This document shows, one piece after another, positions 22,158 through 52,466 of a DNA stretch of 64,000 nucleotides. A program made the position numbers and the translations under genes. The notes below the pieces were generated by a model that searched no databases, was not told the origin of the DNA, and saw nothing but the letters and a program-made list of their open reading frames with translations. Position 1 is the stretch's first letter. Each line of letters begins with the position of its first letter. The stretch lies in the IMG/VR virus record IMGVR_UViG_3300044701_000569, positions 1-64,000 of that record; one strand, written 5' to 3'.

Positions 22158-22169
22158 CCAAGGAACGAT

Positions 22170-23710: not shown

Positions 23711-23741
23711 CCCCGATCGGCAACGGTCGGGGTTTCTTTTT
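23711..23741 (+). terminator. Intrinsic terminator closing the early island
   Basis: CCCCGATCG-GCAA-CGGTCGGGG followed by TTTCTTTTT. Confidence 0.85.
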
Positions 23742-38377: not shown

Positions 38378-38822
38378 CTTCGATACTATGTTCTCTAGCC
38401 AATTCTTTGAGTTCTTTTTTTGTAGATATTCTAGCAAGTAGTTCAACCTCATCAAGTTTCATTGTAGGATATATGGACTGTAGAAACTTAACTGCCTTTG
38501 AGTTAGCAGAGCCTTTCTGTTTAAAACCAATCCATTGATGACTTTCAATTTTTTTAGTATTGCCGGCTTGGCATAATAATTGCCATTGCAACTTAGGATG
38601 CTTGGTTCCTAAAACATTCCAATTTTTATTGTAGTACTCATTAGTTTTGAATACAGCTAATTCTTGTTTTTCTCGAGAACCTTGAACACTGCTAACCCAT
38701 CGGTTAAGTAACCAAAAGCTAACCTGTTTCTTTTCTTCGGGGGACAGTTCATCCCACACTGAGATTGCTCCCATATCAACAGCAGCTAATAGGTCTTTTA
38801 TAGGAAGTTTTTCTTGTGCCAT
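38364..38822 (-). CDS. Possible clamp-loader small subunit (gp62-like)
   Basis: Size, LLNRWVS...N...H.KLQW.LL...H.WI pattern and replication context. Confidence 0.5.
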   Translation of the reverse strand: MAQEKLPIKDLLAAVDMGAISVWDELSPEEKKQVSFWLLNRWVSSVQGSREKQELAVFKTNEYYNKNWNVLGTKHPKLQWQLLCQAGNTKKIESHQWIGFKQKGSANSKAVKFLQSIYPTMKLDEVELLARISTKKELKELAREHSIEDADF

Positions 38823-39472
38823 TCTTCTAAATCCGCAGGTGTGTTAATTTCAATTCCGTCAAAGTCTACTTCAGTTACTGCTATTTTAACATCATTTTGT
38901 AGCCAACGCAACTGTTCTAATTTCTCTATTTCTTCTTCCAGAAAAGACTTTGCCGTTGTCCACATTATTTTGGACTCTCTATTGTAGCCATAAATTCCTA
39001 AATGATGGTCGCCATACAAAAGTGGTGCCCTACAAAACCAATGTGCTCTGCCTCTTGAATGAATCATCTTAACAGCATTTGGATCTTGTCGCTTATTAAT
39101 ATCCATATGAGTATATGCTGTAGCTACATCTGCCTTTTGTAGTGCTCGTTCTACTGAGCGAATAATATCTACGGTAATGTCAGGCATGTCACCTTGAACA
39201 TTAATGTACCTATCGTATTGTAAATGTTCGTCAATTACTTCCATACAACGACTAGTTCCGCAATCATGATCTACCTTTGATAGTATTACATGAGGACTGG
39301 GTATCTGTTCTGCAATACGCTCGTCATCTGTAAGAACGTAGGTGTCTAACCCTGTTTCTTTACAACGATAAAATACTCGCTGTATTAGAGGAACGCCATT
39401 TAACTTTGCAAGGGGTTTACCTTCAAATCGTTGACTACCGTATCTTGCAGGAATTAAGATAGCAGTTGTCAT
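38798..39472 (-). CDS. kdsB: CMP-Kdo synthetase (3-deoxy-manno-octulosonate cytidylyltransferase)
   Basis: IPARYGSQRFEGKPL, GTSR, INVQGD, HLGIYGY, EKLEQLR, INTPADL. Confidence 0.92.
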   Translation of the reverse strand: MTTAILIPARYGSQRFEGKPLAKLNGVPLIQRVFYRCKETGLDTYVLTDDERIAEQIPSPHVILSKVDHDCGTSRCMEVIDEHLQYDRYINVQGDMPDITVDIIRSVERALQKADVATAYTHMDINKRQDPNAVKMIHSRGRAHWFCRAPLLYGDHHLGIYGYNRESKIMWTTAKSFLEEEIEKLEQLRWLQNDVKIAVTEVDFDGIEINTPADLEEWHKKNFL

Positions 39473-40113
39473 TTAAATTTAACACCTATGTTAAATGTAA
39501 AAATATTATCGTCAGCTAAATCATGCACATATAGATTAGACATACCTACAATTAATGTGTCTGACAACGCATAGTCTAACCCAGTTTTGTTTCTAATGTA
39601 GGTGTCAGTACCTTGTTCTATTAAAAATTTATTTGTAAATGTTAGTTTAGAATCTACGTTATAAGTTAACCATATTGAATTTCTTACTACTGGTTCAAAG
39701 TCATATCTGTCTTTTAGCGTTCCTAATGACACTTCATTTGATAGTTTAACTTTACTTGTTCGAATCAACTTGTATCCGTAGCCGGCGCCAGCAATAACCT
39801 TTTCGTCCGGAGTTCTAAGTTTATCAAACTCATAACGGCCAACTACAAATACATAGTTACGCTCATCTAAAGAATAATTCTGTTTACCCGAAAAAAATCC
39901 TCTATTTCGAGAAACTATATTCTTTTGTTCACTAAAGAAGTAATCAGTTTCAATTACACTTTGCCACGGACCGTTTTCAACAGTATGATCAAAACCTAAG
40001 GTTAGGTTAGCTGTATCATTTGAAGATATTAAGCCGCCTATAGTTGCTTTTGTTTCAGCGTGTGAAATACTACTAGACAAAAGTAGCAATAGTCCTAACA
40101 AGTATTGTTTCAT
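39469..40113 (-). CDS. DUF481/YdiY-like outer-membrane beta-barrel
   Basis: Signal peptide, amphipathic strands, GAGYGYKL, C-terminal IGVKF. Confidence 0.7.
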   Translation of the reverse strand: MKQYLLGLLLLLSSSISHAETKATIGGLISSNDTANLTLGFDHTVENGPWQSVIETDYFFSEQKNIVSRNRGFFSGKQNYSLDERNYVFVVGRYEFDKLRTPDEKVIAGAGYGYKLIRTSKVKLSNEVSLGTLKDRYDFEPVVRNSIWLTYNVDSKLTFTNKFLIEQGTDTYIRNKTGLDYALSDTLIVGMSNLYVHDLADDNIFTFNIGVKFK

Positions 40114-40119
40114 AAATTC

Positions 40120-40899
40120 TTAATTTCCTTCATACTGATATTTTACGATGTCGCTAACAATCTTTTCAAAGTCGTTTAAATGAATCATATTTGGACCGTC
40201 TGACGGAGCATTGTTGGGGTCGGGATGAACTTCTAAAAAGAAGTTTTTTACACCTAAGGCACTAGCAGCCCTAGTAAGGCCAGCAACATATTCGCGGTTC
40301 CCGCCAGAACTATGGCCTTGACCACCTGGCTTCTGAACTGAGTGGGTGGCATCAAATATGATAGGACAACTATAGCTGTTAAGCATATAATCCAACCCAG
40401 TAAAATCAACAACCAGAGCATTATATCCAAAGCTAGTTCCCCTTTCTGTTATCCAAACTTCTTTAGCATCTGTAGTCTTACTTAAGATACCCTTGATATC
40501 CCAAGGAGCGAGAAATTGACCTTTTTTTATGTTTACTATTTTACCTGTCTGACAGGCCTCTATAATTAAATCTGTTTGTCTACACAAAAATGCAGGTATT
40601 TGTAAAACGTCAATTGCATCTGAGTAGGTTGCAGTTAACGCTCTAATCTGTTGAACAGAGTGTACGTCTGTTAGTGTTTTTAAACCTTTAATAGACTTTT
40701 TCAACTTTGAAAAGTCTGACATTGTCTCAGCTAACCCAATACCGCGGATACCGTTTGCACTAGTTCGATTGGCTTTATCGTAACTGGCTTTGAAATAATA
40801 TTCAATGCCCCATGCACGACAGATATCATTACAGTGCGATGCAATTTTAAATGAATGCTCAAGGGTTTCGTGTTGGCAGGGTCCTGCTATTATCCTCAT
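40120..40899 (-). CDS. kdsA: Kdo-8-phosphate synthase
   Basis: IAGPC, KASYDKANRTS, QIPAFLCRQTDL, KKGQF, ERG.SFGY, DATHSVQ, SDGPN. Confidence 0.95.
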   Translation of the reverse strand: MRIIAGPCQHETLEHSFKIASHCNDICRAWGIEYYFKASYDKANRTSANGIRGIGLAETMSDFSKLKKSIKGLKTLTDVHSVQQIRALTATYSDAIDVLQIPAFLCRQTDLIIEACQTGKIVNIKKGQFLAPWDIKGILSKTTDAKEVWITERGTSFGYNALVVDFTGLDYMLNSYSCPIIFDATHSVQKPGGQGHSSGGNREYVAGLTRAASALGVKNFFLEVHPDPNNAPSDGPNMIHLNDFEKIVSDIVKYQYEGN

Positions 40900-41153
40900 T
40901 ATCTGCTTTCTTTTAAAAGATAATACAAATTTAATAGTTTGTCAAGTTCTTTTGCAAAAGTTTCGTTTGTTTTTGCTAAACGTTGCATTTCTGAAATGTC
41001 ACTAAAACCAAGACGAGAATGGGAAGGTTCTAGACCACCTATTACCCATCTTGGTATAGTGTTGTTTGGAGGGTCTCGATATCGAGCATAAACTGTTCCT
41101 TTGTCGTCTCTCTCGTAAATGAGAGCCTCGCCTGGGATTAGTTTAGTCTCCAA
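40899..41153 (-). CDS. Hypothetical protein
   Basis: Likely TTG start; LIPGEALIYER...VYAR. Confidence 0.55.
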   Translation of the reverse strand: METKLIPGEALIYERDDKGTVYARYRDPPNNTIPRWVIGGLEPSHSRLGFSDISEMQRLAKTNETFAKELDKLLNLYYLLKESR

Positions 41154-41154
41154 T

Positions 41155-41478
41155 TTACTTTGCTGTCTTTGGCTTGCGACCAGGCTTCTTAGCAGCAGTT
41201 GCGGCTGCTGCCTTAGGCTTAGTGACAGTCTTCTTAACAGCGGCACGTGTCTTCTTAACAACTGTTTCTGCTGCTACTGCAACATCAGCAGTATTAACCT
41301 TGCCGTCATTGTTAACATCAGCAACTTCCTTTACACCTTCAACTGCGTTTGTCACAGCAGCAGATGCGTCCTTTACATCAACCTTACCATCAGAGTTAAC
41401 ATCTAACCCCTTTGAACGATTGAAATAAATTAGTGCGCCACCAACTAAAATAACTAGACCAATCAGTACAATTTCCAT
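41155..41478 (-). CDS. Membrane-anchored protein with two DxNxDGxV (dockerin/EF-hand-like) repeats and a K/A-rich tail
   Basis: DVNSDGKVD and DVNNDGKVN; AGGAG SD. Confidence 0.7.
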   Translation of the reverse strand: MEIVLIGLVILVGGALIYFNRSKGLDVNSDGKVDVKDASAAVTNAVEGVKEVADVNNDGKVNTADVAVAAETVVKKTRAAVKKTVTKPKAAAATAAKKPGRKPKTAK

Positions 41479-41487
41479 TTTTATCTC

Positions 41488-41856
41488 CTATTTGGATTTA
41501 CTAATTTTAGAGCCAACAGTCCTACGAACTATGTCGTCGTGACTAAATTCAGCCCAATATAGTTCGAAAGCAACTCCATCTTCTATGCCTTCAAACTGAT
41601 GGATCTTACCCGGCTTAACTTGGGTAAAATCGCCTGCTGACAAAACTGTTTCATCTATTAAACCGTTTTGATCAGCATCTTGCCAAACACGAACAATCAT
41701 TTTTCCTGACTCTACAAAGAAGCCATTCCACTTGTAACGATGCTCGTGTTCAGAACATTTGTATCCAGCTTTAAATTCAATACGATGAAATTCTAACACA
41801 CCATTCGCGTGTATTAGTTCTGTATTTCCCCATATTTTTCCAGCTTTGACACCCAT
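41488..41856 (-). CDS. Cupin-fold protein
   Basis: CSEHEH..KWNGFFVESG...PG.IHQF. Confidence 0.75.
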   Translation of the reverse strand: MGVKAGKIWGNTELIHANGVLEFHRIEFKAGYKCSEHEHRYKWNGFFVESGKMIVRVWQDADQNGLIDETVLSAGDFTQVKPGKIHQFEGIEDGVAFELYWAEFSHDDIVRRTVGSKISKSK

Positions 41857-41866
41857 GCAAAAATCC

Positions 41867-42373
41867 TTATAATAATTTACTGTATTCAATTACTTCGCAC
41901 TGTCTACTTATGTCTTTAACAAAGTATGCGCATGGAGGATTGATTCCGTCAGTAATAGGAACAGTTAAAAGCTGTCCATTTTTCATTTTTGGAAAATACC
42001 ATTTAACATCTGTATAAAAGTTTACTATGTTTATCTTTGCAAATTCTGTTTTAAAACCTTTTAATGGATTAAAAACAAATGCTTCAAATCCTCTATCATT
42101 AATACTAGTTAATGGTAGCACTTCTAGGTCCATTCCACTTTCAGAATCTCCCACAGCAATGCTCCAATCAACTGGCATAGTTACTTCATGCCCGCCTATG
42201 TCTAATACCATAGCTGGAGCATTAAATGATTCTAAAAATATTAATGGTATAAAGAAAAAATCCGGTGTAGAAGGATCAGAATTATCTAATACACTAAACC
42301 TAATGTCTTCGTCTATTTGTTCCGGTAAGTTATCTAATTGATAGCATTTATTATCTAATGTTAATATTCTCAT
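41867..42373 (-). CDS. Conserved phage hypothetical protein
   Basis: ORF between UvsW and the cupin. Confidence 0.7.
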   Translation of the reverse strand: MRILTLDNKCYQLDNLPEQIDEDIRFSVLDNSDPSTPDFFFIPLIFLESFNAPAMVLDIGGHEVTMPVDWSIAVGDSESGMDLEVLPLTSINDRGFEAFVFNPLKGFKTEFAKINIVNFYTDVKWYFPKMKNGQLLTVPITDGINPPCAYFVKDISRQCEVIEYSKLL

Positions 42374-42380
42374 GTATTCC

Positions 42381-43844
42381 TTAGTTCCAATCAACTTTTT
42401 CTAATGTAAAGGGGTATTGAGCCTCCTTATAAAACTTCTTACGTTGTGTAAGATGTCGCTTTGCATATTTGCAAGTACTTGTGATATCCCAAATCTGTAC
42501 AAAGTCTTTGTCTTTTGCTTTTCGTACTCCGCGTCCAATACTTTGAATAACACGGACAAAACTCTTTCCGGGTTCAATAAGAACTAAATTAAAAATACGA
42601 GGAATATTAATACCAACAGCAGCAACACCATAAGTTGCGATGATGACATTATTTGTTGCGTCTTGTATTTCGTCGTATGATTCTTTTCTGTCTTTTACCT
42701 TAACTGATCCGTTAATGAAAACAGAGTCCGGAATAAGGCTTTGGAGTTTTTCGCCTGCACTAATTCTATCAACTAAAATTAGAGTGTTGCCTGATTGCTT
42801 TACTGTGTTTAAAAGTTTGCCTAGATAATCTAATCGCTTTTCATCAGTTACTAGATATTTTAGTTCCGATTGATAATCTCTAAATTCTGGTAGGTCTAAT
42901 AGCTGCACTACGTTTACATGGCAGTCTGCTAGAACACCTCGGTCCTGCAATTCCTTAGCAGTAATTTGTCCTATTACTGGACCTATACTAGCATGCAGTG
43001 CTTCGTATTCAAATTTCTCTTTAGGAATAGTTCCTGTAAGTCCCCAGCGTATAGGAGCATTGCGTAGATTTCGTGTGAGTAGATTTTTTAAAACTTCGGC
43101 TTTGGCTTGGTGAACTTCGTCTACAATAACAGTTGATACACCTTCTAAAAATTCTGCTAGACTTAGTACAGCGCCGCCGTCTTTGAATTTCTTTTCGAGG
43201 ATGTTAAGACTTTGCCATGTACAGATAGTGTGTGTTTTGTTTAGTTCTTTCTTATCACCAAAGTATACGCCTACATCTAATCCGCAGTTGCGATAATCTT
43301 CTGCTGTTTGTTCTACTAGACTTTTGTTTGGTACTATAACAAGACTACGTCCATATTTCTCAGTTAAATGACTTAGTGTTGCTGTGGTAATAGTTTTGCC
43401 TGCACCAGTAGCAATCTGTTGCAATGATTGAGGATTTTCAAGGAAACTATTAACAGCTTCAACTTGATAATCTCTCAGCATAATAAGTTCACCTTCGGCT
43501 GGATGTCCTTTAGGCCAGCGAACATTTTGATCAGCCCAATAGGTTTCAGTAATTGGTTGAAACTCAAATTTAACATGAGATCTTTGATCTACTATATCAT
43601 CAATTGATACATTGTTTTTTGTAAGTATATCTACAACAACATCAAGGTGGTTAACGTAGCCTGTACCGCCAATACCAAAAAAAGCAACCTTACCATCCCA
43701 TCGGCCCAATTTATACTGAGGCATATACTTTGCGTAAGGCACTTCAAATTTGAGTGCATTGGATAGCTTACGTCGAACATCAACATCAAGCCCTTCTAGC
43801 TTGATATTAACTTCGTCTTCTATAATTAATCTACAACTGGTCAT
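42381..43844 (-). CDS. uvsW: UvsW-like superfamily 2 helicase
   Basis: RDYQ, ATGAGKT, DEVH, GLTGT, QSIGRGVR. Confidence 0.9.
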   Translation of the reverse strand: MTSCRLIIEDEVNIKLEGLDVDVRRKLSNALKFEVPYAKYMPQYKLGRWDGKVAFFGIGGTGYVNHLDVVVDILTKNNVSIDDIVDQRSHVKFEFQPITETYWADQNVRWPKGHPAEGELIMLRDYQVEAVNSFLENPQSLQQIATGAGKTITTATLSHLTEKYGRSLVIVPNKSLVEQTAEDYRNCGLDVGVYFGDKKELNKTHTICTWQSLNILEKKFKDGGAVLSLAEFLEGVSTVIVDEVHQAKAEVLKNLLTRNLRNAPIRWGLTGTIPKEKFEYEALHASIGPVIGQITAKELQDRGVLADCHVNVVQLLDLPEFRDYQSELKYLVTDEKRLDYLGKLLNTVKQSGNTLILVDRISAGEKLQSLIPDSVFINGSVKVKDRKESYDEIQDATNNVIIATYGVAAVGINIPRIFNLVLIEPGKSFVRVIQSIGRGVRKAKDKDFVQIWDITSTCKYAKRHLTQRKKFYKEAQYPFTLEKVDWN

Positions 43845-45073
43845 CTAAGTATCTTTTTAAAAGGACTCATTGTTTCGTCACGATATATGATTAAATCGCA
43901 ATAAGAAGAAACATAAGCATCGCTGTACCTATTAGGAAAGGAACCAAACACTAGTGCTGTTGAGGGCTTCCATTCTCCAGACACTAATAGTTTAGGTAAC
44001 TTTTCATTACTAATATATACAATTTTTGTATTTTTGTCAACCCAGTTATTAAGAGATTTGTCTTTTACATACTCATTAAAACTAGCACCTACATCATTAT
44101 TAAGCCTAAATAGAACACTTTGTTCTTTAGCAGCAATTAGATGCCTAAAAATATTAAACGTATCATACACCTGTTGTTCAGCATGTTTTTCATCTACTAT
44201 AACTAGTAGAGGATAACGATTTAATTGATGTATAGATTCTAATAATTGTTTTAATTCTGATTCCGAAGGCTTACTTAAAAAGTCAACATCTTTTCTGGTT
44301 GCAATTTGAAAGGACAATCCTTCACCGATGACAAGATCTTTAATTCTATCAATACCATATCTTCTTTTTCTATCAATATAAAAGATTAGAGTTTTCTCTG
44401 AAAGTGGACCAATCTCTTCTTCTGCTATTAATTGAAGTTTTTTTGAAACATTAAACAGTTGATAAGAATCAATAGTAGGAATATAGTTATTAGGATTATT
44501 TTTAATTTCTACAATATTGTTGTAGAAATCTAATAACTGCTCATCTATTATAAAATCTTTTTCCTTAAATGTGTTTATTACAGTATAGACATTTTTTTCA
44601 TTTGCAACAAAGAAATGCACATGAGTACCTTTGCCATGATAGTAAGTTTTTCTATCAGAAACACAATGTTCAATATCTGAAATTATTTTTTTACTAAAGG
44701 GAAATCTTACACAAAACCATTGTAAGTTTTTACTATACTCTGATACTATTTGATTATCTAAAATTATTTGATCTTCTATAGTTACTAGTCTAATAAATTT
44801 TCTTCTATCTATTACTCGAAGCGGTAATCGTGTTTTTTCTACAGCATGAGTAATGTCTATATCTATTTTTAAAAACTGATCAGTGTAAGAACTAATCAAT
44901 TTAGTCTTGCATAGTTCATATTGTTTATCGGTTAACCCTACACCTTTAAATACTTGTCGCGCAATACTACTCAAGATAGTATACTCAGAAGAAATGATCT
45001 CCATCTTAGGTCCGGTTTTTAACCCTGCTAATAATTCTAAACAATCTTCAATGGTGGGATTTTCTTTTAGCAT
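43841..45073 (-). CDS. Hypothetical protein
   Basis: 410-aa ORF; TTGACA-17-TATAGT promoter upstream (45081-45109). Confidence 0.7.
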   Translation of the reverse strand: MLKENPTIEDCLELLAGLKTGPKMEIISSEYTILSSIARQVFKGVGLTDKQYELCKTKLISSYTDQFLKIDIDITHAVEKTRLPLRVIDRRKFIRLVTIEDQIILDNQIVSEYSKNLQWFCVRFPFSKKIISDIEHCVSDRKTYYHGKGTHVHFFVANEKNVYTVINTFKEKDFIIDEQLLDFYNNIVEIKNNPNNYIPTIDSYQLFNVSKKLQLIAEEEIGPLSEKTLIFYIDRKRRYGIDRIKDLVIGEGLSFQIATRKDVDFLSKPSESELKQLLESIHQLNRYPLLVIVDEKHAEQQVYDTFNIFRHLIAAKEQSVLFRLNNDVGASFNEYVKDKSLNNWVDKNTKIVYISNEKLPKLLVSGEWKPSTALVFGSFPNRYSDAYVSSYCDLIIYRDETMSPFKKILR

Positions 45074-45091
45074 AACAATAACTATAACAGA

Positions 45092-45940
45092 TTATAGATA
45101 GTCTGTCAACCGCTTGAGCGGTAATCCTTGTGATATTTCTTCTATAGTAAATTCAGTCCAAGCATAATCATTTAACCATTGTTGTCTGTCAGGCATAGAA
45201 GGATTTTCTATATTTTTTAAATCATGCTCTGCTACATTATAGGCAATACTGTTAGGTCCTACTAGTGCAGGAACTCCGTTAACAATACTTTGTATTCCTG
45301 GGTTTGAACTCCAATTAATTGTAGCCCAAATATTTTTAAAATTCATATCAAAACTATCGTAGGTCCCTGCAAGTTGTTGCGGTGTTTGTCGTAGAACGTT
45401 TTTAAATTCTTTTTCAATATCAGGCAGTGGACACCTAGGATGTGGACGTATTATTATAGTTTTATTAGAATACTGTTGAATTTTATCAACAGTTTGAATG
45501 ATCCAATTACTAACATTAGGCATGTCCTGCCACTGTAGGCTTTTATCGTGCTGTGCGCATATTAATATATAATCGCCCTGTGTTCTCCATGGTAGCAGTG
45601 TTAAACCTAGTTGTTCTGCTCGCTCTTTAGAATTATTAGTAGCATAAGGAAATGCAGCAGAGTTTATACCATTTAATCCAACTTTCCATGTTTCACCTCT
45701 TTGGATGCCGCCTACTTCCAAAATAACAATTGGACGTCCTTCTTTTCTAGCCTTTTCCCATATTGCTTTATTTGATCCCATGCGGCCATGCCAAAGCACA
45801 CTCCATATAACATCAATACAATCGTTACTAGGGGTATTGTCAACACAACTATGACCGAGAGCCATAGCCCCAAACCTAAAAGCATCGAACACTGGTTTAG
45901 AATTAAGCGCACCGTATTGTCTCCATAGATTAAATTTCAT
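45092..45940 (-). CDS. KpsS/KpsC-like (capsule synthesis) glycosyltransferase
   Basis: ICAQHD, IRPHP, SSNPG..S...GVP. Confidence 0.55.
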   Translation of the reverse strand: MKFNLWRQYGALNSKPVFDAFRFGAMALGHSCVDNTPSNDCIDVIWSVLWHGRMGSNKAIWEKARKEGRPIVILEVGGIQRGETWKVGLNGINSAAFPYATNNSKERAEQLGLTLLPWRTQGDYILICAQHDKSLQWQDMPNVSNWIIQTVDKIQQYSNKTIIIRPHPRCPLPDIEKEFKNVLRQTPQQLAGTYDSFDMNFKNIWATINWSSNPGIQSIVNGVPALVGPNSIAYNVAEHDLKNIENPSMPDRQQWLNDYAWTEFTIEEISQGLPLKRLTDYL

Positions 45941-46772
45941 TCCAATAAGATTCTTTTCGATCAGTAATTAAGTCTTTGCGTAAACTTTTACCTGAAGTTT
46001 TACGATCCCCTTTCATGTGATCCATCCATGTTCCTAGTACACTGTTTATCAAAGGATGTCCACCACCACCTGTCTTAGCAGTGTTATTGTATATACCATC
46101 ACTGTAATCTAAAGTGCTGTCTTTAAAGTCTTTGTATTTGTCTAAAAGAAAACCAAATATGTAACTGTCATGCCACTCTTCAAGAGTGAATATGCCATTA
46201 TCAGCATCCTCATACATTTTTTCAAAATCCTGTAAGAAGCTATGGCAAACTGGATGATTTAGATTCATTCCGTAAAATCCGCACTCAGGCCAAGTTTGTG
46301 ATCCTTTGCCTCTGCCTACATAGGTAATGTATTTGTTTTCAGGCAGTAGAGATTTAAACTGTTGATGACTCCACGGACTGTGTATGTAGCTGTCAGCATC
46401 CATCCAAACTATCCAAGATCCTGCACGTTTTTCAAACGCATCAAATACCGCATAGGTCTTGTTAGCAAATCTAACAGCATCCCACTTAAATTCTTTATTC
46501 CAATCTCTAGGTCGACGTTCAGGCCACGGACATGTTCCGTTAGCTTTAGGTACATTTTTCCAACGCTCTTTAAATGCAGAAAGTTTAGGTAATGCGGTAG
46601 CAGAGTCTATTATTGTTATCTGTTCACTGTCAGGATTAATAGGGGTGCAGTTTTCTGTATACGCTAGAAGTTTTATCCGCTTGTCTATATTCTTTGCAAA
46701 GCTGTCTAGGAATCTTTGAGCATAAAGATCAAGACCAGCTTTGTGAAATGTTGTTACTACTGTGATAGTCAT
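45930..46772 (-). CDS. GT-A fold glycosyltransferase
   Basis: VWMDAD (DxD), ECGF, EWHDSYIF, H.KG. Confidence 0.7.
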   Translation of the reverse strand: MTITVVTTFHKAGLDLYAQRFLDSFAKNIDKRIKLLAYTENCTPINPDSEQITIIDSATALPKLSAFKERWKNVPKANGTCPWPERRPRDWNKEFKWDAVRFANKTYAVFDAFEKRAGSWIVWMDADSYIHSPWSHQQFKSLLPENKYITYVGRGKGSQTWPECGFYGMNLNHPVCHSFLQDFEKMYEDADNGIFTLEEWHDSYIFGFLLDKYKDFKDSTLDYSDGIYNNTAKTGGGGHPLINSVLGTWMDHMKGDRKTSGKSLRKDLITDRKESYWNEI

Positions 46773-47701
46773 TTTATTGCCCACTTTCTAAGGTGACGCC
46801 AGGCAGATCCGTCTTTAAGTTCGTCTAAAGTCCAGTGCATCTGTGCCATACGATGTATCCAAGATTCTCTATCAAAATCTCTAGGATTTTCTATATAAGA
46901 AAAAATAGAATGTGCAACATCTTTTGCTTGGCTGTTGTTTGAATCTGTTAAGAATACTGGAATACCTTCAATAGCTGCAACTACTCCAGGACTTGAGTTA
47001 TGATTAACTACTGCACTTGCTGTTTTAAAATCATCCATAATATTAGCTGAATGTGAAATTATAACATTTTGTAGTCTGTATCTAACTAGATCTCTTTTAT
47101 GATTTAATACATTCTTATCACCAGGATGAAATCTAACCATAATAGGTTTTTGTGTACACTTCTGAATATCTTTAATTGTTTTAATTAGCCACGGCATAAG
47201 AGGTTGATTATTCATACTCCAGCCGCCGTCTCGCTGACAACAAATTAAAATATAACGTCCGTCTTTTTTCCAAGGCTTTAAGTCTATACCTAATCTTTTT
47301 TTAATTAGTTCCCATCTAGCAGGATCAGGATTGCTGTTACAATATTCCCCAGTTGACGGAAAAATTCCATCATAACTATATCTTAAAAATTTTTGAGAAT
47401 TGCCGGGGTCAGCGTATAGAAAAAGATTACTATCTACAATAATAGTTCTTTTTCCTCTACGTGTTTGTGTATTATAAACATCTTGTCTTAACTTTAGGTG
47501 AGGAGCATTTTTCTTATTATCATGCACAAATCCCTGTATAACTCCAACATCAGTATCAATTGGATTGTAGTCACATACTATAGTTCCCTTATCTCCAGCA
47601 GCCCATACACCTTCTATAAAGTTAACAATGATTTGTGGTTTTTCAGGATTGGTGTTACCTGGAGGTATGCCCATTAGATACGCTGCTACATTTAATGTCA
47701 T
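46769..47701 (-). CDS. KpsS/KpsC-like glycosyltransferase
   Basis: ICCQRD, VRFHPGD, NSSPGVVAAIEGIPV. Confidence 0.55.
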   Translation of the reverse strand: MTLNVAAYLMGIPPGNTNPEKPQIIVNFIEGVWAAGDKGTIVCDYNPIDTDVGVIQGFVHDNKKNAPHLKLRQDVYNTQTRRGKRTIIVDSNLFLYADPGNSQKFLRYSYDGIFPSTGEYCNSNPDPARWELIKKRLGIDLKPWKKDGRYILICCQRDGGWSMNNQPLMPWLIKTIKDIQKCTQKPIMVRFHPGDKNVLNHKRDLVRYRLQNVIISHSANIMDDFKTASAVVNHNSSPGVVAAIEGIPVFLTDSNNSQAKDVAHSIFSYIENPRDFDRESWIHRMAQMHWTLDELKDGSAWRHLRKWAIK

Positions 47702-48513
47702 TGTTCACCTTCTTGTAATATTTTCCAAGCAAATCCGCTTTCAAATTCCATGCAGGTAAATTGTGCATAAGAAAGATGAGCAAAGTATGCTTCTGTTTCA
47801 TCCTTAGTAGGTATACGAGGATTTTCTATGTTTGCTAAATTTGTTTCACAAATTAATTGTGCAGAGTTAGGTCCTAGTGTAATAGCAGGTTTACCCTCCA
47901 TTAGCGCCTCAGTAGCTGCTATACTATTGTATGTTACTAGACAATGAACATCATCAGCTAAAGCAGCTTGTATTGTCTTAGTTGTAACTCTTTCAGATCT
48001 TAACGGTTTCATCCGAACATCAATTGGTCGATCAGTATGCTGTTTGATTTCTTTAACAGTCTTTTCCACCCATTCTTCTGCTGTACCTTCATTAAACATG
48101 TTCATTACTTTGTTTGATGGAGGACATACTAAAATTTTAGATCCCTCAGTATACGGTTTAAATTTATAACCAATTTGCTGTAGTCTATCAAACGGACGTT
48201 CTTTTATTGGGCCTATATTCTGTAGATTATTTTTAGTAACTCTATGCCAAGTTTTATGTTTCCAATTTCCAAAATATCCTGTGTCAATTGCATAAAATGT
48301 TCGACCAGCAGCTATACAACTTTTGATTGCTTTTTGACTGCCGCCGCCAAGACCTCTAATAATAAGGATGTTGTCAGTGTTTTCTTCCTTACTCCAATTT
48401 GAAGGTATGCCGCTGGCTCCTGTAATAAATGCTGTTAAAATAGGATCGTAGTCATGTCCTTTTTTTGCGTAGTTAACACTGCCTATAGAATCTAGTGCTG
48501 CTATTTTACCCAT
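47698..48513 (-). CDS. KpsS/KpsC-like glycosyltransferase
   Basis: IDTGYF, VRMKP, VTYNSIAATEALMEGKP. Confidence 0.5.
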   Translation of the reverse strand: MGKIAALDSIGSVNYAKKGHDYDPILTAFITGASGIPSNWSKEENTDNILIIRGLGGGSQKAIKSCIAAGRTFYAIDTGYFGNWKHKTWHRVTKNNLQNIGPIKERPFDRLQQIGYKFKPYTEGSKILVCPPSNKVMNMFNEGTAEEWVEKTVKEIKQHTDRPIDVRMKPLRSERVTTKTIQAALADDVHCLVTYNSIAATEALMEGKPAITLGPNSAQLICETNLANIENPRIPTKDETEAYFAHLSYAQFTCMEFESGFAWKILQEGEQ

Positions 48514-49180
48514 TCATCATATCCTGTAGTTCTTTTTTCCATAGTTTGTGAAATTCACAATTACGATAATTCTCAAACCACGGGCCGCCTTCGGTGTAAT
48601 GTAATAATTTAGGTTTTTCTAAATCATCGTATACACCTACCAAATAATTCCACGTATGGTCTAGCTCACCAATTTCTTCATCAGCAAGCCAGCTAAACCT
48701 ATGTAAATATGCTCCATTTATTTCTAAGCTATTAACAAGATCCATGTCTAACTTTTTATTACTAGGATGACTGCAATTAAATAGGACAACACTTGACCAA
48801 TTTTTTCTAGGATAGATTGTTTGCTTTTGGCCATCCATCTTAGTGCCTTCCTTGACCCTATAATCATGCTTGACACACATTACTGCATACTGATCGTCAG
48901 CACAATCAAATAACTCTTTGATGTCAGTTGTAAGTATTATGTCACAGTCTATAAACAGTGCCCATCCTTCAAAGTTTGTAAGTTCAGGTACAAGAAATCT
49001 TGTAAACGTAAACTCTGTACTTGCTAGTTTATCAACTGGACGACTATACCATCCCGCATCTCGTAACTCTTGTTGCTTTAGTGGTCGAACGTCTGCAGAT
49101 GGCTGCTTGCTTAGGATACTGTGCTTGCACACCTGATATGCAATATCTTCTCTTGGATCATAACCAACAAATACTTTCAT
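48506..49180 (-). CDS. GT8-like glycosyltransferase
   Basis: VGYDPRE, STEFTFTRFLVP, FIDCD, YPRKNWSS, WNYLVG, HYTEGGPW. Confidence 0.8.
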   Translation of the reverse strand: MKVFVGYDPREDIAYQVCKHSILSKQPSADVRPLKQQELRDAGWYSRPVDKLASTEFTFTRFLVPELTNFEGWALFIDCDIILTTDIKELFDCADDQYAVMCVKHDYRVKEGTKMDGQKQTIYPRKNWSSVVLFNCSHPSNKKLDMDLVNSLEINGAYLHRFSWLADEEIGELDHTWNYLVGVYDDLEKPKLLHYTEGGPWFENYRNCEFHKLWKKELQDMMNG

Positions 49181-49929
49181 TGATCACGTCTCTCTATATC
49201 TTCTTCAATGCACATTTCGCCGTGTTGTATTTCAAGAATATGACACGGCTTAGTAGTAATATTAAAACCTCTGTGCCATACTTCTTTACCTATGTCGTAG
49301 TCTGTATTTTCGTCAAGTTGTATAGTACACTTTGATCCAAGAAAATCTGTTTCAACTTTACAGGATCCTTTTAAGACATACCAATGTTCTGCTCTTTTAA
49401 AATGTCGTTGCATAGAGAGACTCTTTCCAGGTTCTATAACGAGTTCTTTAACTTTATAACTTTTTTTATCATCTAACACTCGATACCACCCCCAAGGTCT
49501 TGCAGTCTTTGGAGCTTTCCATTCTTCTAATATCCAACTGCTAGAATTTGCTTTATTTTCGCCACCTACTCCAAAAACAAATTCAACATCGTTAAAAATC
49601 ATTTCAGGAATATTGTCTTTGGTTCTATCTCCGCCGTTGGCAAAAATAATTTCATCGTTGGGGTATTTTTCTTTAACTTTGCGAATAGCGTCTATTGCAG
49701 AATTATCACTATCGTCAAATGCGATGACTTCGCCTACCATATGTAGGTTGTCTAGGACTACCATTCTTTCTCGCCAGGGCATGAAAGGTCTTCCTTTTTT
49801 ACGAGTAAGCCATTCATCGGAGTTTAAACCAACAACTACATGATCGCCCAAATGATCAGCGTGATTGAGATAAGAAATATGCCCTGAATGTATAGGATCA
49901 AATCCGCCAGTAACTATTACTATTTTCAT
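49177..49929 (-). CDS. Cytidylyltransferase (HIGH-type) fused to a mannose-6-P-isomerase-like cupin
   Basis: GGFDPIHSGH, NSD.WL.RKKG, ANGGDR, SSS; RPWG.Y, SMQRH..RAEHW, EEDIER. Confidence 0.85.
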   Translation of the reverse strand: MKIVIVTGGFDPIHSGHISYLNHADHLGDHVVVGLNSDEWLTRKKGRPFMPWRERMVVLDNLHMVGEVIAFDDSDNSAIDAIRKVKEKYPNDEIIFANGGDRTKDNIPEMIFNDVEFVFGVGGENKANSSSWILEEWKAPKTARPWGWYRVLDDKKSYKVKELVIEPGKSLSMQRHFKRAEHWYVLKGSCKVETDFLGSKCTIQLDENTDYDIGKEVWHRGFNITTKPCHILEIQHGEMCIEEDIERRDQ

Positions 49930-50017
49930 ACATATATTTATGTGCGCACTTAACTGGCATTGTGCGTTAAGGCAGAAGTTGAATTTGCAGAGTTTATTGT
50001 ATTATTTGATAACTCTT

Positions 50018-50581
50018 TTAAACATTAAGTTCAAACAATCTTGCTTCAATACTATTGGTTTTTTTCTTTTTTGAATAGGTATAATTAAAGGTTTTTATTT
50101 CTTTTAAAAATAATACAGATGATATAGCTTTGCTAACTTCTTCCATATTTGAATCATCTACTAAAATATATCTAATATTATTTTCTTTAGCAATCATAAT
50201 ATCGTTTAAAGCAACTTCATAACTATGGCCGCCATCAATAAAAATTAAATCTGCTTCAGGAAATTTAAATTTATTATTGATAATGTCTTGTCTAAGATCT
50301 AATGTATTATATGTAAAAAAATTGTGTCGATGAACAAATTTCTGTTTAACTAAATCTGCGCCTTCTTGTGTCCTACTATTTCGATTAATATCAAAACTGT
50401 TTATCGAAACGTCATCAAACAGGCTTAAAATAATAGTACTACTATGTCCAACATTAAACCCAATTTCAATTAATTTTTTAAAATTAGTTATATCTTTAAC
50501 AGTAGTCCACAATGATATAATATCTTCTTGCAGTTGCATATGCCCTTCTATAGGCTTAGGTAAAAAACTTGTATCAATCAT
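50018..50581 (-). CDS. Class I SAM-dependent methyltransferase
   Basis: EIGFNVGHS, LIFIDGGH, VDD. Confidence 0.8.
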   Translation of the reverse strand: MIDTSFLPKPIEGHMQLQEDIISLWTTVKDITNFKKLIEIGFNVGHSSTIILSLFDDVSINSFDINRNSRTQEGADLVKQKFVHRHNFFTYNTLDLRQDIINNKFKFPEADLIFIDGGHSYEVALNDIMIAKENNIRYILVDDSNMEEVSKAISSVLFLKEIKTFNYTYSKKKKTNSIEARLFELNV

Positions 50582-51150
50582 TTTGTCAAATCCCATGTAA
50601 AACTAAAATTCTGTTTTTTAACAGTAACAATGTTTTGATTATCAAACTTAATGTCAACTATACCGTTATTAATCATAACATCATTTGGCATAACGCCGTT
50701 TGTTTGCGAAAAATTTATTAATTTCCTAGCTCCTTGTGGAGACACACAATAGCCTGCACCGCTTGCCCACCATTGACCAATATAAATTGGTTTGGCTTGA
50801 AATCCTATTACAAATTTATAAACATCTTGAAATTCAATTTTAGGAAAAGAAGTATGCACAACAGCATCATGTTCTAAAATACAGATCGGTTCGTTTAATT
50901 CGATTGCTTTTTTCCAAAGATAATAATGACTTAAAAAACATCCTAAAGTTCCGGGCCTTAAAAAAGATGTTTTACTTTTCTTGTGTTTTAAATTTACAAA
51001 TAAGTTATGTTCTTCAAGTGAAGTATTAATTCCGTTAATACCTTCAAAATAATTTATGTTCCAACCGTAATTTAATGCACTAGAATAGGTTTGTTCAGCC
51101 CACTTAACACTATTTGAGTAATCACTAAGTCTGATAATAAAAGATTTCAT
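50578..51150 (-). CDS. GT25-family glycosyltransferase
   Basis: GCFLSHYYLW, ILEHDA, Y.VSP.GA.KL. Confidence 0.8.
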   Translation of the reverse strand: MKSFIIRLSDYSNSVKWAEQTYSSALNYGWNINYFEGINGINTSLEEHNLFVNLKHKKSKTSFLRPGTLGCFLSHYYLWKKAIELNEPICILEHDAVVHTSFPKIEFQDVYKFVIGFQAKPIYIGQWWASGAGYCVSPQGARKLINFSQTNGVMPNDVMINNGIVDIKFDNQNIVTVKKQNFSFTWDLTK

Positions 51151-51788
51151 AATAAAAATTTTTCATAAAGATAAAGATACTTATCAGACGTCTTTTGATT
51201 TCCTTTTAACGTAAAAAATGCACTTTCTCGTATACTTTTACCATAAGACATCCATACATGAGATAACTCTTTGAAATCGTATCTTTTAGACAACTGATCA
51301 AGAATTATTTGATCTCTACCTATCTGCCATTCTTCTATTGGTTTAGATAATAATTCGCTAGCATAGTCTTTGGCAAACTTAACACTATTAAATGTAACAA
51401 ATCCTGCAAGCCAATGTCCTGCCTTTCTGTGTTTGAGTACATTAATGTTATCAAATATTTCTTGAAATTCGCACTCGTCAAAATCTCTAGTACAGATTGT
51501 ATCAGCATCTAGTGTGATGAAAAAATCTTCGTTAGAAATTTTGTCTGCTACTGCTAAAAATCTTGCTGATTGGAGGTAAGAAATACGAGATTCTTCAGAT
51601 GCAAATTCTCTTGTTTCAAACGAGTAGTTTACATAAGGAAGCCTATCATTTTCATCTGGATTTACTATATGACAATGTAAAGATCCTGCTAACCAAGAGT
51701 TCCTAAGAAATGTAGTTTCTAAAAGAGTCTTACCCCAGTCGTCGTAATATTTTTGATCGCAGGCAATTAAAATATTAAAGTGAGGCAT
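51147..51788 (-). CDS. GT-A fold glycosyltransferase-like protein
   Basis: RFL, LDAD, AGFV, DQ.IL. Confidence 0.55.
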   Translation of the reverse strand: MPHFNILIACDQKYYDDWGKTLLETTFLRNSWLAGSLHCHIVNPDENDRLPYVNYSFETREFASEESRISYLQSARFLAVADKISNEDFFITLDADTICTRDFDECEFQEIFDNINVLKHRKAGHWLAGFVTFNSVKFAKDYASELLSKPIEEWQIGRDQIILDQLSKRYDFKELSHVWMSYGKSIRESAFFTLKGNQKTSDKYLYLYEKFLL

Positions 51789-52233
51789 CTTCCATACCTG
51801 CTACACGTAGTTTGACAATGTTTGTAATCTGCCATTGCTTTTGATCCAGTGCTTTAAGTACACCTAACCATTTATTTCGCATAAGAGCAAATTCATTGAT
51901 AATCTTTTCATAATCAACTACGTCAGCTTCACCGTCTACGTATTTTTCTACGTCACGACTGGACAGAGCTCGTTGATAATTTTCAAGATATTTTTTGAAG
52001 TAAGAACTACGTAGACGTCGTAGTTCTATATTTAGATATTCTAGTACTGCTTCAATTTCTTGAAGCTGATTAAATCGATGTTCAACAAGACCGGGCATGC
52101 TGGCAGCAGCCCGTTCTATGTTTCCTGCTAACTTAACTTCAGAACGAGCTGCTTCCAGCTCGTCTTCAAAGTATTGTATTGCATTTGGAATTTCAGAAAT
52201 ATCTCTCGATACTTTACTGTACCATCCCATCAA
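51775..52233 (-). CDS. uvsY: UvsY-like recombination mediator
   Basis: Helical; KY.ENY...LSSRD.EKYVDGE, C-terminal LRVAGMED; adjacent to uvsX. Confidence 0.7.
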   Translation of the reverse strand: MMGWYSKVSRDISEIPNAIQYFEDELEAARSEVKLAGNIERAAASMPGLVEHRFNQLQEIEAVLEYLNIELRRLRSSYFKKYLENYQRALSSRDVEKYVDGEADVVDYEKIINEFALMRNKWLGVLKALDQKQWQITNIVKLRVAGMEDASL

Positions 52234-52466
52234 TAGTCCTCGTCTGGTTCTTCGTCGTAACCGTCACTATAGTCATTTTCTAGATAATAATTAATAGCTT
52301 CGTCAAGTTCATTATCAGTACCAATAACTTCTTCAAGTATTTCGTCACTTACACCATAGTCGGCAAGTAGATCAACGTACTTTTCTGCTACAATATCTAA
52401 CTGCTTCTTGTCGATATACTCTTTAAACATTATCCAAATATCGGCAATTTGACTTTCATTCAACAT
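52230..52466 (-). CDS. Small acidic hypothetical protein
   Basis: ORF track. Confidence 0.65.
   Translation of the reverse strand: MLNESQIADIWIMFKEYIDKKQLDIVAEKYVDLLADYGVSDEILEEVIGTDNELDEAINYYLENDYSDGYDEEPDEDY

What the first reader, a model, noticed from the sequence alone, without database searches (positions are those of the whole stretch)
38798..51788. Phage-encoded Kdo activation and transfer pathway
Seen: kdsA and kdsB flank an outer-membrane beta-barrel gene. About 4 kb away are three related proteins with (R/K)xHP-like and NS..G/A..EA...G.P motifs, plus GT8-like, GT25, two GT-A, a cytidylyltransferase-cupin fusion and a methyltransferase. Established: KdsA makes Kdo-8-P, KdsB makes CMP-Kdo, and KpsS/KpsC-family enzymes are CMP-Kdo-dependent beta-Kdo transferases. 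No kdsC or kdsD is seen in this window. Inference: the phage builds a Kdo-containing glycan on virion proteins (shielding or mimicry) or remodels the host surface (superinfection exclusion). The KpsS-like assignment rests on short motifs only.
Basis: partly seen in the sequence, partly recalled or inferred. Interest (0 to 1): 0.6.

Follow-up and report, generated by a model that had tools for sequence, protein, structure and literature searches.

The report
Phage Kdo genes plus Kdo-transferase-like enzymes
A 358-kb freshwater T4-like phage carries the two key genes for making activated Kdo sugar, plus three copies of an unannotated enzyme whose closest solved-structure matches are bacterial Kdo transferases but which lacks their catalytic aspartate, so it probably builds an acidic-sugar glycan with altered chemistry on a target that is still unknown.

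Summary
kdsB (38798-39472), a signal-peptide DUF481 outer-membrane barrel (39469-40113) and kdsA (40120-40899) are real. Three paralogs lie 4.2 kb away: KT1 45092-45940, KT2 46769-47701, KT3 47698-48513. They sit among GT8, GT25, two DXD GT-A-like genes, a cytidylyltransferase-PMI-cupin fusion and an O-methyltransferase.

However, the family-defining QXXXD aspartate is Ser in KT1, Gly in KT2 and Val in KT3. KT3 also lacks the Gln and the HP histidine, and in sibling phages it is fused behind GT8.

They belong to a large unannotated family (4,617 clusters at 50% identity).

The whole 357,559-bp genome has no KdsC, KdsD, WaaA or NeuB. kdsB is its only CMP-sugar synthetase.

The link between kdsAB and this family holds only within this phage lineage. 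The DUF481 gene sits in an insertion hot spot.

The acceptor (host envelope, virion or DNA) is unresolved.

The parts
38798..39472 (-). kdsB-like CMP-Kdo synthetase (224 aa). It is the only CTP_transf_3 gene in the genome.
   Evidence: Pfam PF02348 E 9e-27. The top five NCBIfam hits are all KdsB, best 172 bits against a 193 cut-off. It is the single genome-wide match.
39469..40113 (-). DUF481 outer-membrane beta-barrel with a Sec signal peptide. It is cargo inserted at the kdsA-kdsB junction.
   Evidence: PF04338 78.8 bits. Signal peptide visible in the translation. Absent from all 80 related loci and from 50,697 phage records. Relatives carry URO-D or an FkbM methyltransferase at the same junction.
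40120..40899 (-). kdsA, Kdo-8-phosphate synthase (259 aa).
   Evidence: TIGR01362 326.6 bits and NF003543 337 bits, both above their cut-offs. 587 IMG/VR stretches encode relatives.
41488..41889 (-). Small metal-binding cupin (the true start is probably 41856). It travels with kdsA in several phage lineages. It is a candidate sugar(-phosphate) isomerase, but that function is not shown.
   Evidence: Cupin_2 E 2.8e-7. Beside kdsA in 55 of 80 loci, in at least three gene orders. The fold is a generic cupin, with small phosphomannose and lyxose isomerases among the hits.
42381..43844 (-). UvsW-type helicase. Together with the unknown 410-aa gene at 43841-45073, it separates the kdsA module from the glycosyltransferase module.
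   Evidence: ResIII, Helicase_C and UvsW_N hits.
45092..45940 (-). KT1 (282 aa), a Kdo-transferase-like GT-B enzyme. It has Gln130, His167-Pro168 and Glu75, but Ser134 at the nucleophile position.
45930..46784 (-). GT-A-like glycosyltransferase (284 aa) with a DXD motif.
   Evidence: Weak GT2 hit, E 0.0097. Atlas clusters are named nucleotide-diphospho-sugar transferase. The translation shows D-A-D.
46769..47701 (-). KT2 (310 aa), a paralog with Gln and the HP His but Gly at the nucleophile position.
   Evidence: BLASTP to KT1 E 8e-25. 2,182 clusters at 90% identity found as relatives. Motifs.
47698..48513 (-). KT3 (271 aa), a paralog of the PPSxK / R.KP subtype with no Gln, no Asp and no His. 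It is the module that relatives carry fused behind GT8.
   Evidence: BLASTP E 8e-16 and 4e-14. 12 of 13 long family proteins are this subtype. They are fused to GT8 or GT1 domains.
48506..49180 (-). GT8-family glycosyltransferase (224 aa). Its gene overlaps KT3's by 8 bp, and the two form a single ORF in sibling phages.
   Evidence: PF01501 32 bits against a 24.3 cut-off. Fused ORFs of 572-590 aa in L008, L014, L049 and L069.
49177..49929 (-). Fusion of a HIGH-type cytidylyl/adenylyl-transferase (RfaE-II/TagD-like) with a type II phosphomannose-isomerase cupin. Its product is unknown.
   Evidence: PF01467 E 7e-13 plus PF01050 E 6e-25. TIGR02199 and TIGR01479 partial hits. PDB relatives are cytidylyltransferases.
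50018..50596 (-). Class I SAM O-methyltransferase-like protein (192 aa).
   Evidence: Methyltransf_24 and Methyltransf_3 hits.
50578..51150 (-). GT25 (LPS/LOS-type) glycosyltransferase (190 aa).
   Evidence: PF01755 71 bits against a 24 cut-off.
51147..51788 (-). GT-A-like protein (213 aa) with a DXD motif and a weak DUF6492 hit.
   Evidence: PF20102 E 8e-4. D-A-D motif in the translation.
51775..53547 (-). uvsY (51775-52233) and uvsX (52456-53547), the upstream boundary of the island.
   Evidence: phrog_231 UvsY-like E 7e-18. RecA family hit.

Best explanation
The window belongs to a 357.6-kb T4-like jumbo phage found in lakes. Between uvsY and the genes beyond uvsW it carries a co-directional glycan-building island with tightly packed genes, many overlapping.

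Module 1 supplies the donor. KdsA condenses PEP with arabinose-5-P to give Kdo-8-P. A host phosphatase (KdsC or another) frees Kdo. KdsB makes CMP-beta-Kdo. Arabinose-5-P comes from host KdsD, or possibly from the kdsA-linked cupin.

Module 2 holds GT8, GT25, two GT-A-like enzymes, an O-methyltransferase, a nucleotidyltransferase-isomerase fusion and three paralogous GT-B proteins.

The paralogs belong to a large, unannotated, phage-rich family. It is a sister of the retaining beta-Kdo transferases GT99, GT107 and GT140.

KT1 and KT2 keep the CMP-donor half of that active site: the Gln, the HP His that protonates the CMP phosphate, the NS and G.P motifs, and an acidic residue in the N-terminal domain. 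I therefore infer that they transfer Kdo, the only ulosonic acid the phage provisions, from CMP-Kdo to a glycan made by the neighbouring glycosyltransferases.

Because the Asp nucleophile is Ser or Gly, they cannot use the Asp-adduct double displacement. The likely alternatives are direct inverting transfer (giving alpha-Kdo) or a different nucleophile.

KT3 has lost the Gln, Asp and His. It is the split form of the C-terminal module of GT8-KT3 fusion proteins, so it is probably an accessory or acceptor-binding module of GT8.

The target is not determined. My split is: host envelope (LPS/LOS-type or lipid-linked glycan) about 0.45, virion proteins about 0.3, DNA about 0.1, other about 0.15.

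Shown by tool results: gene identities, paralogy, fold and profile kinship, motif states, synteny and fusions. Inferred: the donor, the stereochemistry and the acceptor.
For: - KdsA and KdsB identities.
- kdsB is the sole CMP-sugar synthetase in the genome and there is no NeuB.
- Profile A2 hits only WbbB (E 4.6e-4) and KpsC (E 7e-3 to 0.09) among 177,635 PDB sequences, apart from one weak epimerase hit. The HP and NS motifs align.
- Foldseek top 28 hits are all Kdo transferases at E about 2e-7.
- A 19-member subfamily keeps the canonical QxxxD, aligned to the KpsC and WbbB nucleophile.
- Canonical members sit in a bacterial polysaccharide locus with an ABC transporter and in viral glycan islands with CTP_transf_3 and GT29.
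- Synteny of kdsA-kdsB with KT1-KT3 is kept in all 27 sibling loci long enough to show it.
- GT8-KT3 fusions exist.
- GT8 and GT25 are LPS-core-type families.
Against: - The defining QXXXD Asp is absent from all three paralogs and from 74 plus 17 of the 127 representatives. WbbB D232A and KpsC D160A have no detectable activity, and D232N retains about 0.4% (PMC9587256).
- There is no direct evidence for the donor.
- kdsA occurs in other phage lineages without the family: G004 at 77% complete and G009 at 47%.
- The family occurs in Pelagibacter phage Mosig and in Caulobacter jumbo phages without kdsAB.
- uvsW and an unknown gene separate the two modules.
- An adjacent HIGH-type cytidylyltransferase could supply a different CDP- or CMP-linked donor.
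- TM-scores to the Kdo transferases are only 0.45-0.54.
Confidence: 0.45

Rival explanations
1. There are two unrelated modules. kdsA and kdsB are ordinary auxiliary metabolic genes that keep the host CMP-Kdo/LPS supply running during infection. The three paralogs use a different activated donor, such as another CMP-sugar from the host or a CDP-linked polyol or sugar phosphate made by the adjacent cytidylyltransferase-cupin fusion.
For: - There is no overlap between family-bearing and kdsAB-bearing GenBank phages.
- kdsA sits in at least four other gene contexts, for example beside PMM, a GT8-like gene and UvdE.
- The nucleophile Asp is lost.
- The HIGH-type cytidylyltransferase lies two genes from KT3.
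- uvsW splits the island.
Against: - Hosts that make LPS supply CMP-Kdo themselves, so absence of kdsAB in other phages does not argue against Kdo as donor.
- The whole genome encodes no other ulosonic-acid pathway.
Confidence: 0.25
2. The island glycosylates virion proteins (capsid, tail or fibres), as in chloroviruses and some mycobacteriophages, to shield or tune adsorption.
For: In Caulobacter phage CcrColossus the two family members (gp127, gp128) lie directly after tail protein genes. They sit with a sialyltransferase-like gene and other glycosyltransferase genes, and ahead of the lysis cassette. The family is phage-rich.
Against: Here the island sits among replication and recombination genes (uvsW, uvsX, uvsY, primase, helicase), not among structural genes. 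GT8, GT25 and KpsC/WbbB-type enzymes classically act on lipid-linked acceptors. No virion data exist.
Confidence: 0.2
3. The glycosyltransferases hypermodify phage DNA with sugars including Kdo, as reported for some phage GT clusters, to evade restriction.
For: There is precedent for a phage glycosyltransferase adding a Kdo-like ulosonic acid to 5hmC (bioRxiv 10.1101/2023.12.21.572611). The island is embedded in the DNA-metabolism region.
Against: The genome's only thymidylate-synthase-family gene is a bona fide ThyA (E 1e-86 to solved TS structures). No Tet/JBP match was found, although the control for that search was uninformative. The methyltransferase is O-MT-like, not a DNA C5-MT. The reported DNA glycosyltransferases resemble T4 beta-GT, whereas these proteins resemble KpsC and WbbB.
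Confidence: 0.07
4. The paralogs are non-catalytic pseudo-glycosyltransferases (scaffolds or lectin-like modules) that organise the GT-A, GT8 and GT25 enzymes.
For: All three lack the catalytic Asp. KT3 also lacks the Gln and the His, and recurs as a C-terminal appendage of other glycosyltransferase domains.
Against: KT1 and KT2 subfamilies keep Gln130, Arg165, His167, Pro168, Ser212, Gly222, Pro224 and Glu268 nearly invariant across 50%-identity clusters. That pattern is typical of a working donor site.
Confidence: 0.1

Closest known systems
KpsC (GT107) retaining beta-Kdo transferase modules of group 2 capsule synthesis (PDB 6MGB, 6MGC, 6MGD, 8FUW, 8FUX)
   Different: There is no Pfam Capsule_synth match. 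The QXXXD Asp (D160) is Ser, Gly or Val here. The phage proteins are about 40 residues shorter than a KpsC module, are single-module, and have no C-terminal membrane anchor. Sequence identity is 10-13%.
WbbB GT99 module (Raoultella terrigena O-antigen beta-Kdo cap; PDB 5FA0, 8CSB-8CSF)
   Different: Asp232 is not conserved. The WbbB module is about 400 aa with a larger helical insertion. Equivalence of the Glu158 general base was not established here.
KrkA GT140 (E. coli K13 capsule Kdo transferase; PDB 9YFX-9YFZ; PMC12887879)
   Different: KrkA keeps an Asp nucleophile (D193), is trimeric, and is fused to a ribosyltransferase.
Phage and giant-virus kdsA/kdsB auxiliary genes (Synechococcus phage S-SCSM2R, PMC12801897; marine environmental viral genome, PMC5332604)
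   Same: KdsA and KdsB are 42% and 35% identical to the S-SCSM2R proteins. They likewise lie among glycosyltransferases and are interpreted as cell-surface modification genes.
   Different: The S-SCSM2R locus has no member of the KT family within 8 kb of kdsA. Here kdsAB are syntenic with three KT paralogs across a whole lineage.
KdoT (ELM1-like inverting CMP-Kdo GT-B of Acinetobacter; PMC12856342) and WaaA (GT30)
   Same: These are CMP-Kdo-dependent GT-B enzymes working by direct inverting transfer, which is the chemistry I propose as most likely for KT1 and KT2.

Membership tests
Retaining beta-Kdo glycosyltransferases (GT99/GT107/GT140) | Modified GT-B fold closest to solved members | tested here: met
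Retaining beta-Kdo glycosyltransferases (GT99/GT107/GT140) | Invariant QXXXD motif with the Asp nucleophile (WbbB D232, KpsC D160) | tested here: not met
   The aligned column is Ser in KT1, Gly in KT2 and Val in KT3. Among 127 representatives it is S 74, D 19 and G 17. KT3 also has Pro in place of the Gln.
Retaining beta-Kdo glycosyltransferases (GT99/GT107/GT140) | HP-motif His that protonates the CMP phosphate (WbbB H265) | tested here: met
   KT1 has R-P-H-P and KT2 has R-F-H-P, aligned to WbbB R-A-H-P. The feature is not met in KT3, which has R-M-K-P. Across the family the column is H in 109 of 127 and K in 17 of 127.
Retaining beta-Kdo glycosyltransferases (GT99/GT107/GT140) | [quoted passage not shown] | tested here: inconclusive
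   An always-acidic column exists at position 75 (E 79, D 47 of 127), at the end of an N-domain strand.
Retaining beta-Kdo glycosyltransferases (GT99/GT107/GT140) | Transfer of Kdo from CMP-beta-Kdo with retention | not testable with these tools
   This needs an enzyme assay and NMR or MS of the product.
Pfam Capsule_synth (KpsS/KpsC, PF05159) | Match to the family HMM | tested here: not met
   No hit even at E 10 for the three proteins. No hit in the six-frame genome search.
KdsA (Kdo-8-P synthase) | Equivalog HMM above the curated cut-off | tested here: met
   TIGR01362 326.6 bits against 314, and NF003543 337.3 bits against 242.
KdsB (CMP-Kdo synthetase) | Equivalog HMM above the curated cut-off | tested here: inconclusive
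   The best five hits are all KdsB models but fall below their cut-offs (172 against 193, and 129.5 against 155). The next family, PseF, scores only 19.9 bits. Pfam CTP_transf_3 is well above its cut-off.
Complete CMP-Kdo pathway (KdsD, KdsA, KdsC, KdsB) | Presence of arabinose-5-P isomerase (SIS) and Kdo-8-P phosphatase | tested here: not met
   No SIS domain and no KdsC match anywhere in the 357,559-bp genome. Both searches found matches in all 14 control genomes.
Phage DNA sugar-hypermodification systems (5hmC-based) | An enzyme that makes a hydroxymethyl-pyrimidine (dCMP/dUMP hydroxymethylase, or C5-MT plus TET) | tested here: not met
   The only TS-family gene is a genuine ThyA. There was no Tet_JBP hit, but that search had no positive control.
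DUF481 outer-membrane beta-barrel | Pfam match above the cut-off plus a signal peptide | tested here: met
   78.8 bits against 21.1. The N-terminal hydrophobic leader ends in a small-x-small site.

The most novel reading that the evidence does not exclude
A very large, unannotated, phage-rich glycosyltransferase family (4,617 clusters at 50% identity) descends from the same stock as the retaining beta-Kdo transferases. Most of its members have exchanged the Asp nucleophile for Ser or Gly. On this reading they are natural mechanistic variants, either inverting alpha-Kdo transferases or enzymes with a non-Asp nucleophile. A His-less, Gln-less subtype would have become a dedicated accessory module fused to GT8 or GT1 enzymes. 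Aquatic jumbo phages would then use self-supplied CMP-Kdo to build Kdo-containing glycans of a kind not described for any virus of bacteria.
Probability: 0.3. Interest if true: 0.75.

Novelty: new variant of a known kind. Interest (0 to 1): 0.55.

Why it matters
Retaining beta-Kdo transferases are the only glycosyltransferases shown to use a covalent Asp-sugar intermediate. Three CAZy families of them are known, all from bacterial capsule or O-antigen systems.

This result points to a fourth, much larger branch with no Pfam or PHROG match. It is abundant in lake and ocean phages. Canonical QxxxD members coexist in it with Ser, Gly and Pro/Lys variants. That gives a natural series for testing how the double-displacement mechanism arose or was lost.

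It also gives a concrete, testable role to one of the commonest unexplained 'LPS-like' gene islands of aquatic T4-like phages, in which phage-made CMP-Kdo is consumed by phage glycosyltransferases.

Finally, it corrects two tempting over-readings. The outer-membrane gene between kdsA and kdsB is incidental cargo. kdsAB and the transferase-like family are linked only in this lineage.

Tried and rejected
- Near-identity DNA search of the island against GenBank phages gave no match.
- Pfam at E up to 10, PHROGs and NCBIfam gave nothing for the three paralogs.
- The three-sequence profile A1 against the PDB gave only noise. The signal appeared only with the 127-sequence profile.
A broad viral or bacterial census of the family could therefore not be run.
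- DUF481 relatives in 185,579 species genomes: none close, so it gave no host clue.
- I suspected that the 329-aa and 181-aa genes found between kdsA and kdsB in relatives were the missing KdsD and KdsC. They are URO-D and an FkbM methyltransferase, so the idea was rejected.
- The idea that the kdsA-linked cupin is a non-SIS arabinose-5-P isomerase got only generic cupin matches. It is kept as a lead, not a finding.
- Scans for the T4 late-promoter motif, sigma-70 promoters and terminators showed no enrichment and gave no timing information.
- An RNA-library check found short contigs on uvsW, KT1, KT2 and KT3. The tool warns that DNA carry-over cannot be excluded, so this is not claimed as expression.
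- One Pfam call failed on a wrong frame and was corrected.

Full report
**Setting**

The window is the first 64 kb of a 357,559-bp IMG/VR virus record. CheckV rates it 100% complete, the ends are linear, and GC is 39%.

UvsW, UvsX, UvsY, a gp61-like primase and a gp41-like helicase mark it as a T4-like jumbo phage.

Near-identical DNA occurs in freshwater, lake and wetland metagenomes from 14 studies. Relatives at 67-85% protein identity are numerous in IMG/VR, and relatives of KT2 include proteins recorded from Tara sources.

**Check of the observation**

- kdsA (40120-40899) passes two NCBIfam equivalog cut-offs.
- kdsB (38798-39472) has KdsB models as its five best hits, slightly under their cut-offs, and a strong CTP_transf_3 match.
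- The gene between them (39469-40113) is a DUF481 beta-barrel with a clear signal peptide.
- GT8, GT25, the cytidylyltransferase-PMI-cupin fusion and the O-methyltransferase are confirmed.
- The two 'GT-A' genes have only weak family hits, but each carries a DXD motif and one has GT-A-named Atlas neighbours.
- No SIS/KdsD, KdsC, WaaA, Capsule_synth or NeuB gene exists anywhere in the genome. kdsB is the only CMP-sugar synthetase.

**The three paralogs**

KT1 (45092-45940), KT2 (46769-47701) and KT3 (47698-48513) are homologous to each other, with E values from 4e-14 to 8e-25. They match nothing in Pfam, PHROGs or NCBIfam.

They belong to a very large family:
- 2,182 clusters at 90% identity for KT2 alone.
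- 4,617 representative clusters at 50% identity for the family profile.

A 127-member alignment shows nearly invariant Arg107, Arg165, Pro168, Ser212, Gly222, Pro224, Trp255 and Glu268. Gln130 is present in 107 of 127 and His167 in 109 of 127.

Searched against all PDB sequences, that profile returns only beta-Kdo transferases above noise:
- WbbB at E 4.6e-4, with the R.HP and NS motifs aligned.
- KpsC at E 7e-3 to 0.09.

The AlphaFold model of KT1 is very confident, with pLDDT 96.8 and pTM 0.92. The fold searches agree:
- The Foldseek top 28 PDB hits are all WbbB, KpsC or KrkA, at E about 2e-7.
- An exhaustive search of 48,161 representative chains that does not depend on Foldseek gives the same top four.

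**Where membership fails**

The literature defines these enzymes by three features (PMC9587256; PMC10148158; PMC12887879):
- an invariant QXXXD motif whose Asp forms the covalent Kdo adduct (WbbB D232, KpsC D160, KrkA D193);
- a general-base Glu;
- the HP His.

In the profile alignments the Gln of the family aligns with the Gln of KpsC and WbbB. The Asp column is position 134 of KT1.

That column is Ser in KT1, Gly in KT2 and Val in KT3. Among 127 representatives it is Ser in 74, Asp in 19 and Gly in 17.

The 19 Asp-bearing members form a canonical G-Q-x-x-x-D-(A/T/S)-S subfamily that aligns its Asp with the solved enzymes. Where their genomic context could be read:
- one lies in a bacterial polysaccharide locus with GT1, GT2 and GT4 genes, an ABC transporter and O-acetyltransferases;
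- two lie in virus-like glycan islands with GT29 sialyltransferase-like genes, and one of those islands also has a CTP_transf_3 gene.

The family is thus a genuine relative that includes canonical-looking members, but this phage's copies are derived.

An acidic residue two positions after the Gln in KT1 and KT2 is not conserved among their orthologs, where it is D, N, E or Q. It is therefore not a relocated nucleophile.

KT3 belongs to a distinct, conserved subtype with the motifs P-P-S-x-K and R-x-K-P, found in 17 of 127 representatives. It lacks the Gln, the Asp and the His.

Twelve of 13 long family proteins are of this subtype, fused behind GT8, GT1 or unknown N-terminal domains. In sibling phages GT8 and KT3 form one ORF of 572-590 aa. 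Here the two genes overlap by 8 bp. KT3 is therefore best read as an accessory module of GT8.

**Linkage with kdsAB**

Among 80 IMG/VR loci fetched with KdsA, all 27 that extend far enough upstream show the same order:

CT-cupin, GT8, KT3, KT2, GT-A, KT1, g410, uvsW, phrog_11279, cupin, g40899, kdsA, kdsB.

Outside this lineage the link dissolves:
- kdsA lies in at least four other contexts, for example with PTPS, a GT8-like gene, PMM and UvdE.
- Of 23 kdsA-bearing records, 10 contain the family and 13 do not. Most of the 13 are small fragments, but a 77%-complete record also lacks it.
- In GenBank phages the family occurs in 17 records (Caulobacter jumbo phages, Pelagibacter phage Mosig, one spring virus). 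kdsA occurs in 4 and kdsB in 6, with no overlap.

Because LPS-making hosts supply CMP-Kdo themselves, this does not exclude Kdo as the donor. It does mean that co-occurrence cannot prove it.

**The outer-membrane gene**

DUF481 is absent from all 80 related loci and from every GenBank phage record.

In most relatives kdsA and kdsB abut or overlap. In nine relatives a uroporphyrinogen decarboxylase sits between them, and in one an FkbM methyltransferase does.

A phage-encoded secreted barrel remains of interest in its own right.

**Missing pathway steps**

KdsD and KdsC are absent genome-wide. From general knowledge, kdsC is dispensable in E. coli and host KdsD can supply arabinose-5-P.

A small metal cupin (41488-41889) accompanies kdsA in 55 of 80 loci and in several gene orders. 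Its fold is a generic cupin, with small phosphomannose and lyxose isomerases among the matches. It is a candidate isomerase, not more.

**Mechanism proposed**

- Shown: the phage carries the committed synthase and the activating enzyme for Kdo, and no other ulosonic-acid pathway.
- Shown: KT1 and KT2 keep the donor-side residues of CMP-Kdo transferases.
- Inferred: KT1 and KT2 take Kdo from CMP-Kdo, with His167 acting on the phosphate.
- Inferred: lacking the Asp, they transfer directly to an acceptor hydroxyl activated by the acidic residue at position 75 (inverting, giving alpha-Kdo), or they use another nucleophile.
- Inferred: GT8+KT3, GT25 and the GT-A-like enzymes build the rest of the glycan, and the O-methyltransferase decorates it.

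**Acceptor**

- LPS-type families (GT8, GT25) and lipid-acting relatives favour a host envelope glycolipid.
- The CcrColossus arrangement, next to tail genes, favours virion glycosylation in that lineage.
- DNA glycosylation has a precedent, but the genome has a genuine ThyA and no hydroxymethylase or TET.
- An RNA library from a lake holding this phage contains short contigs on uvsW, KT1, KT2 and KT3. This is compatible with expression but does not prove it.

**Verdict**

Phage kdsA and kdsB are already known (PMC12801897, PMC5332604). What is new:
- the recognition of a very large Kdo-transferase-like family in phages;
- its variant catalytic motifs;
- the GT8-fused His-less subtype;
- the lineage-wide synteny with kdsAB.

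Donor, stereochemistry and target remain to be shown experimentally.

Noticed in passing
window 39469-40113; relatives L018, L021, L022, L023, L024, L027, L048, L072, L083 (URO-D) and L008 (FkbM methyltransferase): The kdsA-kdsB junction is a cargo insertion hot spot. This phage has a DUF481 outer-membrane barrel there, nine relatives have a uroporphyrinogen decarboxylase (a haem-pathway gene), and one has an FkbM methyltransferase. Most relatives have nothing there.
   Followed up: yes
window 41488-41889: A 122-133 aa metal cupin is more conserved than kdsA (58-97% identity). It stays next to kdsA in several unrelated gene orders across phage lineages. It could replace the missing arabinose-5-P isomerase, but the fold search gives only generic cupin matches.
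   Followed up: partly
window 47698-49180; L008:1085-2833, L014:970-2688, L049:599-2338, L069:2-1774: GT8 and the His-less KT3 module are one fused ORF in sibling phages and two overlapping genes here. Across metagenomes, 12 of 13 long family proteins carry this KT3-type module at the C-terminus of another glycosyltransferase.
   Followed up: yes
window 33346-34329: A carbamoyltransferase (NodU/CmcH N-terminal domain, E 4e-27) lies between the gp61-like primase (34436-35419) and the gp41-like helicase (31901-33337).
   Followed up: no
window 37175-37678: A phage-encoded peptide deformylase (E 3e-38) lies just downstream of kdsB. It is conserved in only some sibling loci.
   Followed up: no
window 41155-41478: A small ORF with a dockerin/EF-hand-like calcium-binding repeat lies between the cupin and kdsA. 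It overlaps the TTG-start ORF 40899-41261, so one of the two gene models is probably wrong.
   Followed up: no
window about 12000-24000: This stretch has about 50% GC, against 30-40% in the glycan island. It is packed with small plus-strand ORFs and carries three tRNA genes (Met-CAT, Leu-TAA, Arg-TCT at 16545-16863). The composition step is unexplained.
   Followed up: no
L095 (Caulobacter phage CcrColossus 99532-101210): Two family members (one His-type, one Lys-type) sit immediately after tail protein genes. They lie beside a sialyltransferase-like gene, a GT-A gene and a GT9 gene, and before the lysis cassette. This context suggests virion or late-stage glycosylation in that lineage.
   Followed up: partly
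L003 (Pelagibacter phage Mosig 125709-127971): Mosig carries two Lys-type (His-less) family members interleaved with glycosyltransferases, a sulfotransferase and methyltransferases. It has no kdsA or kdsB.
   Followed up: partly
window 42600-48599, runs X20 and X6: A lake metatranscriptome library from the same study as a DNA run holding this phage at about 99.6% identity contains 150-187 nt contigs on uvsW, KT1, KT2 and KT3. DNA carry-over cannot be excluded.
   Followed up: partly
window 49177-49929; L051, L078: The cytidylyltransferase-PMI-cupin fusion also lies near kdsA and the small cupin in a different phage lineage that lacks the KT family (G004, 77% complete). Its product and any tie to Kdo metabolism are unknown.
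   Followed up: no
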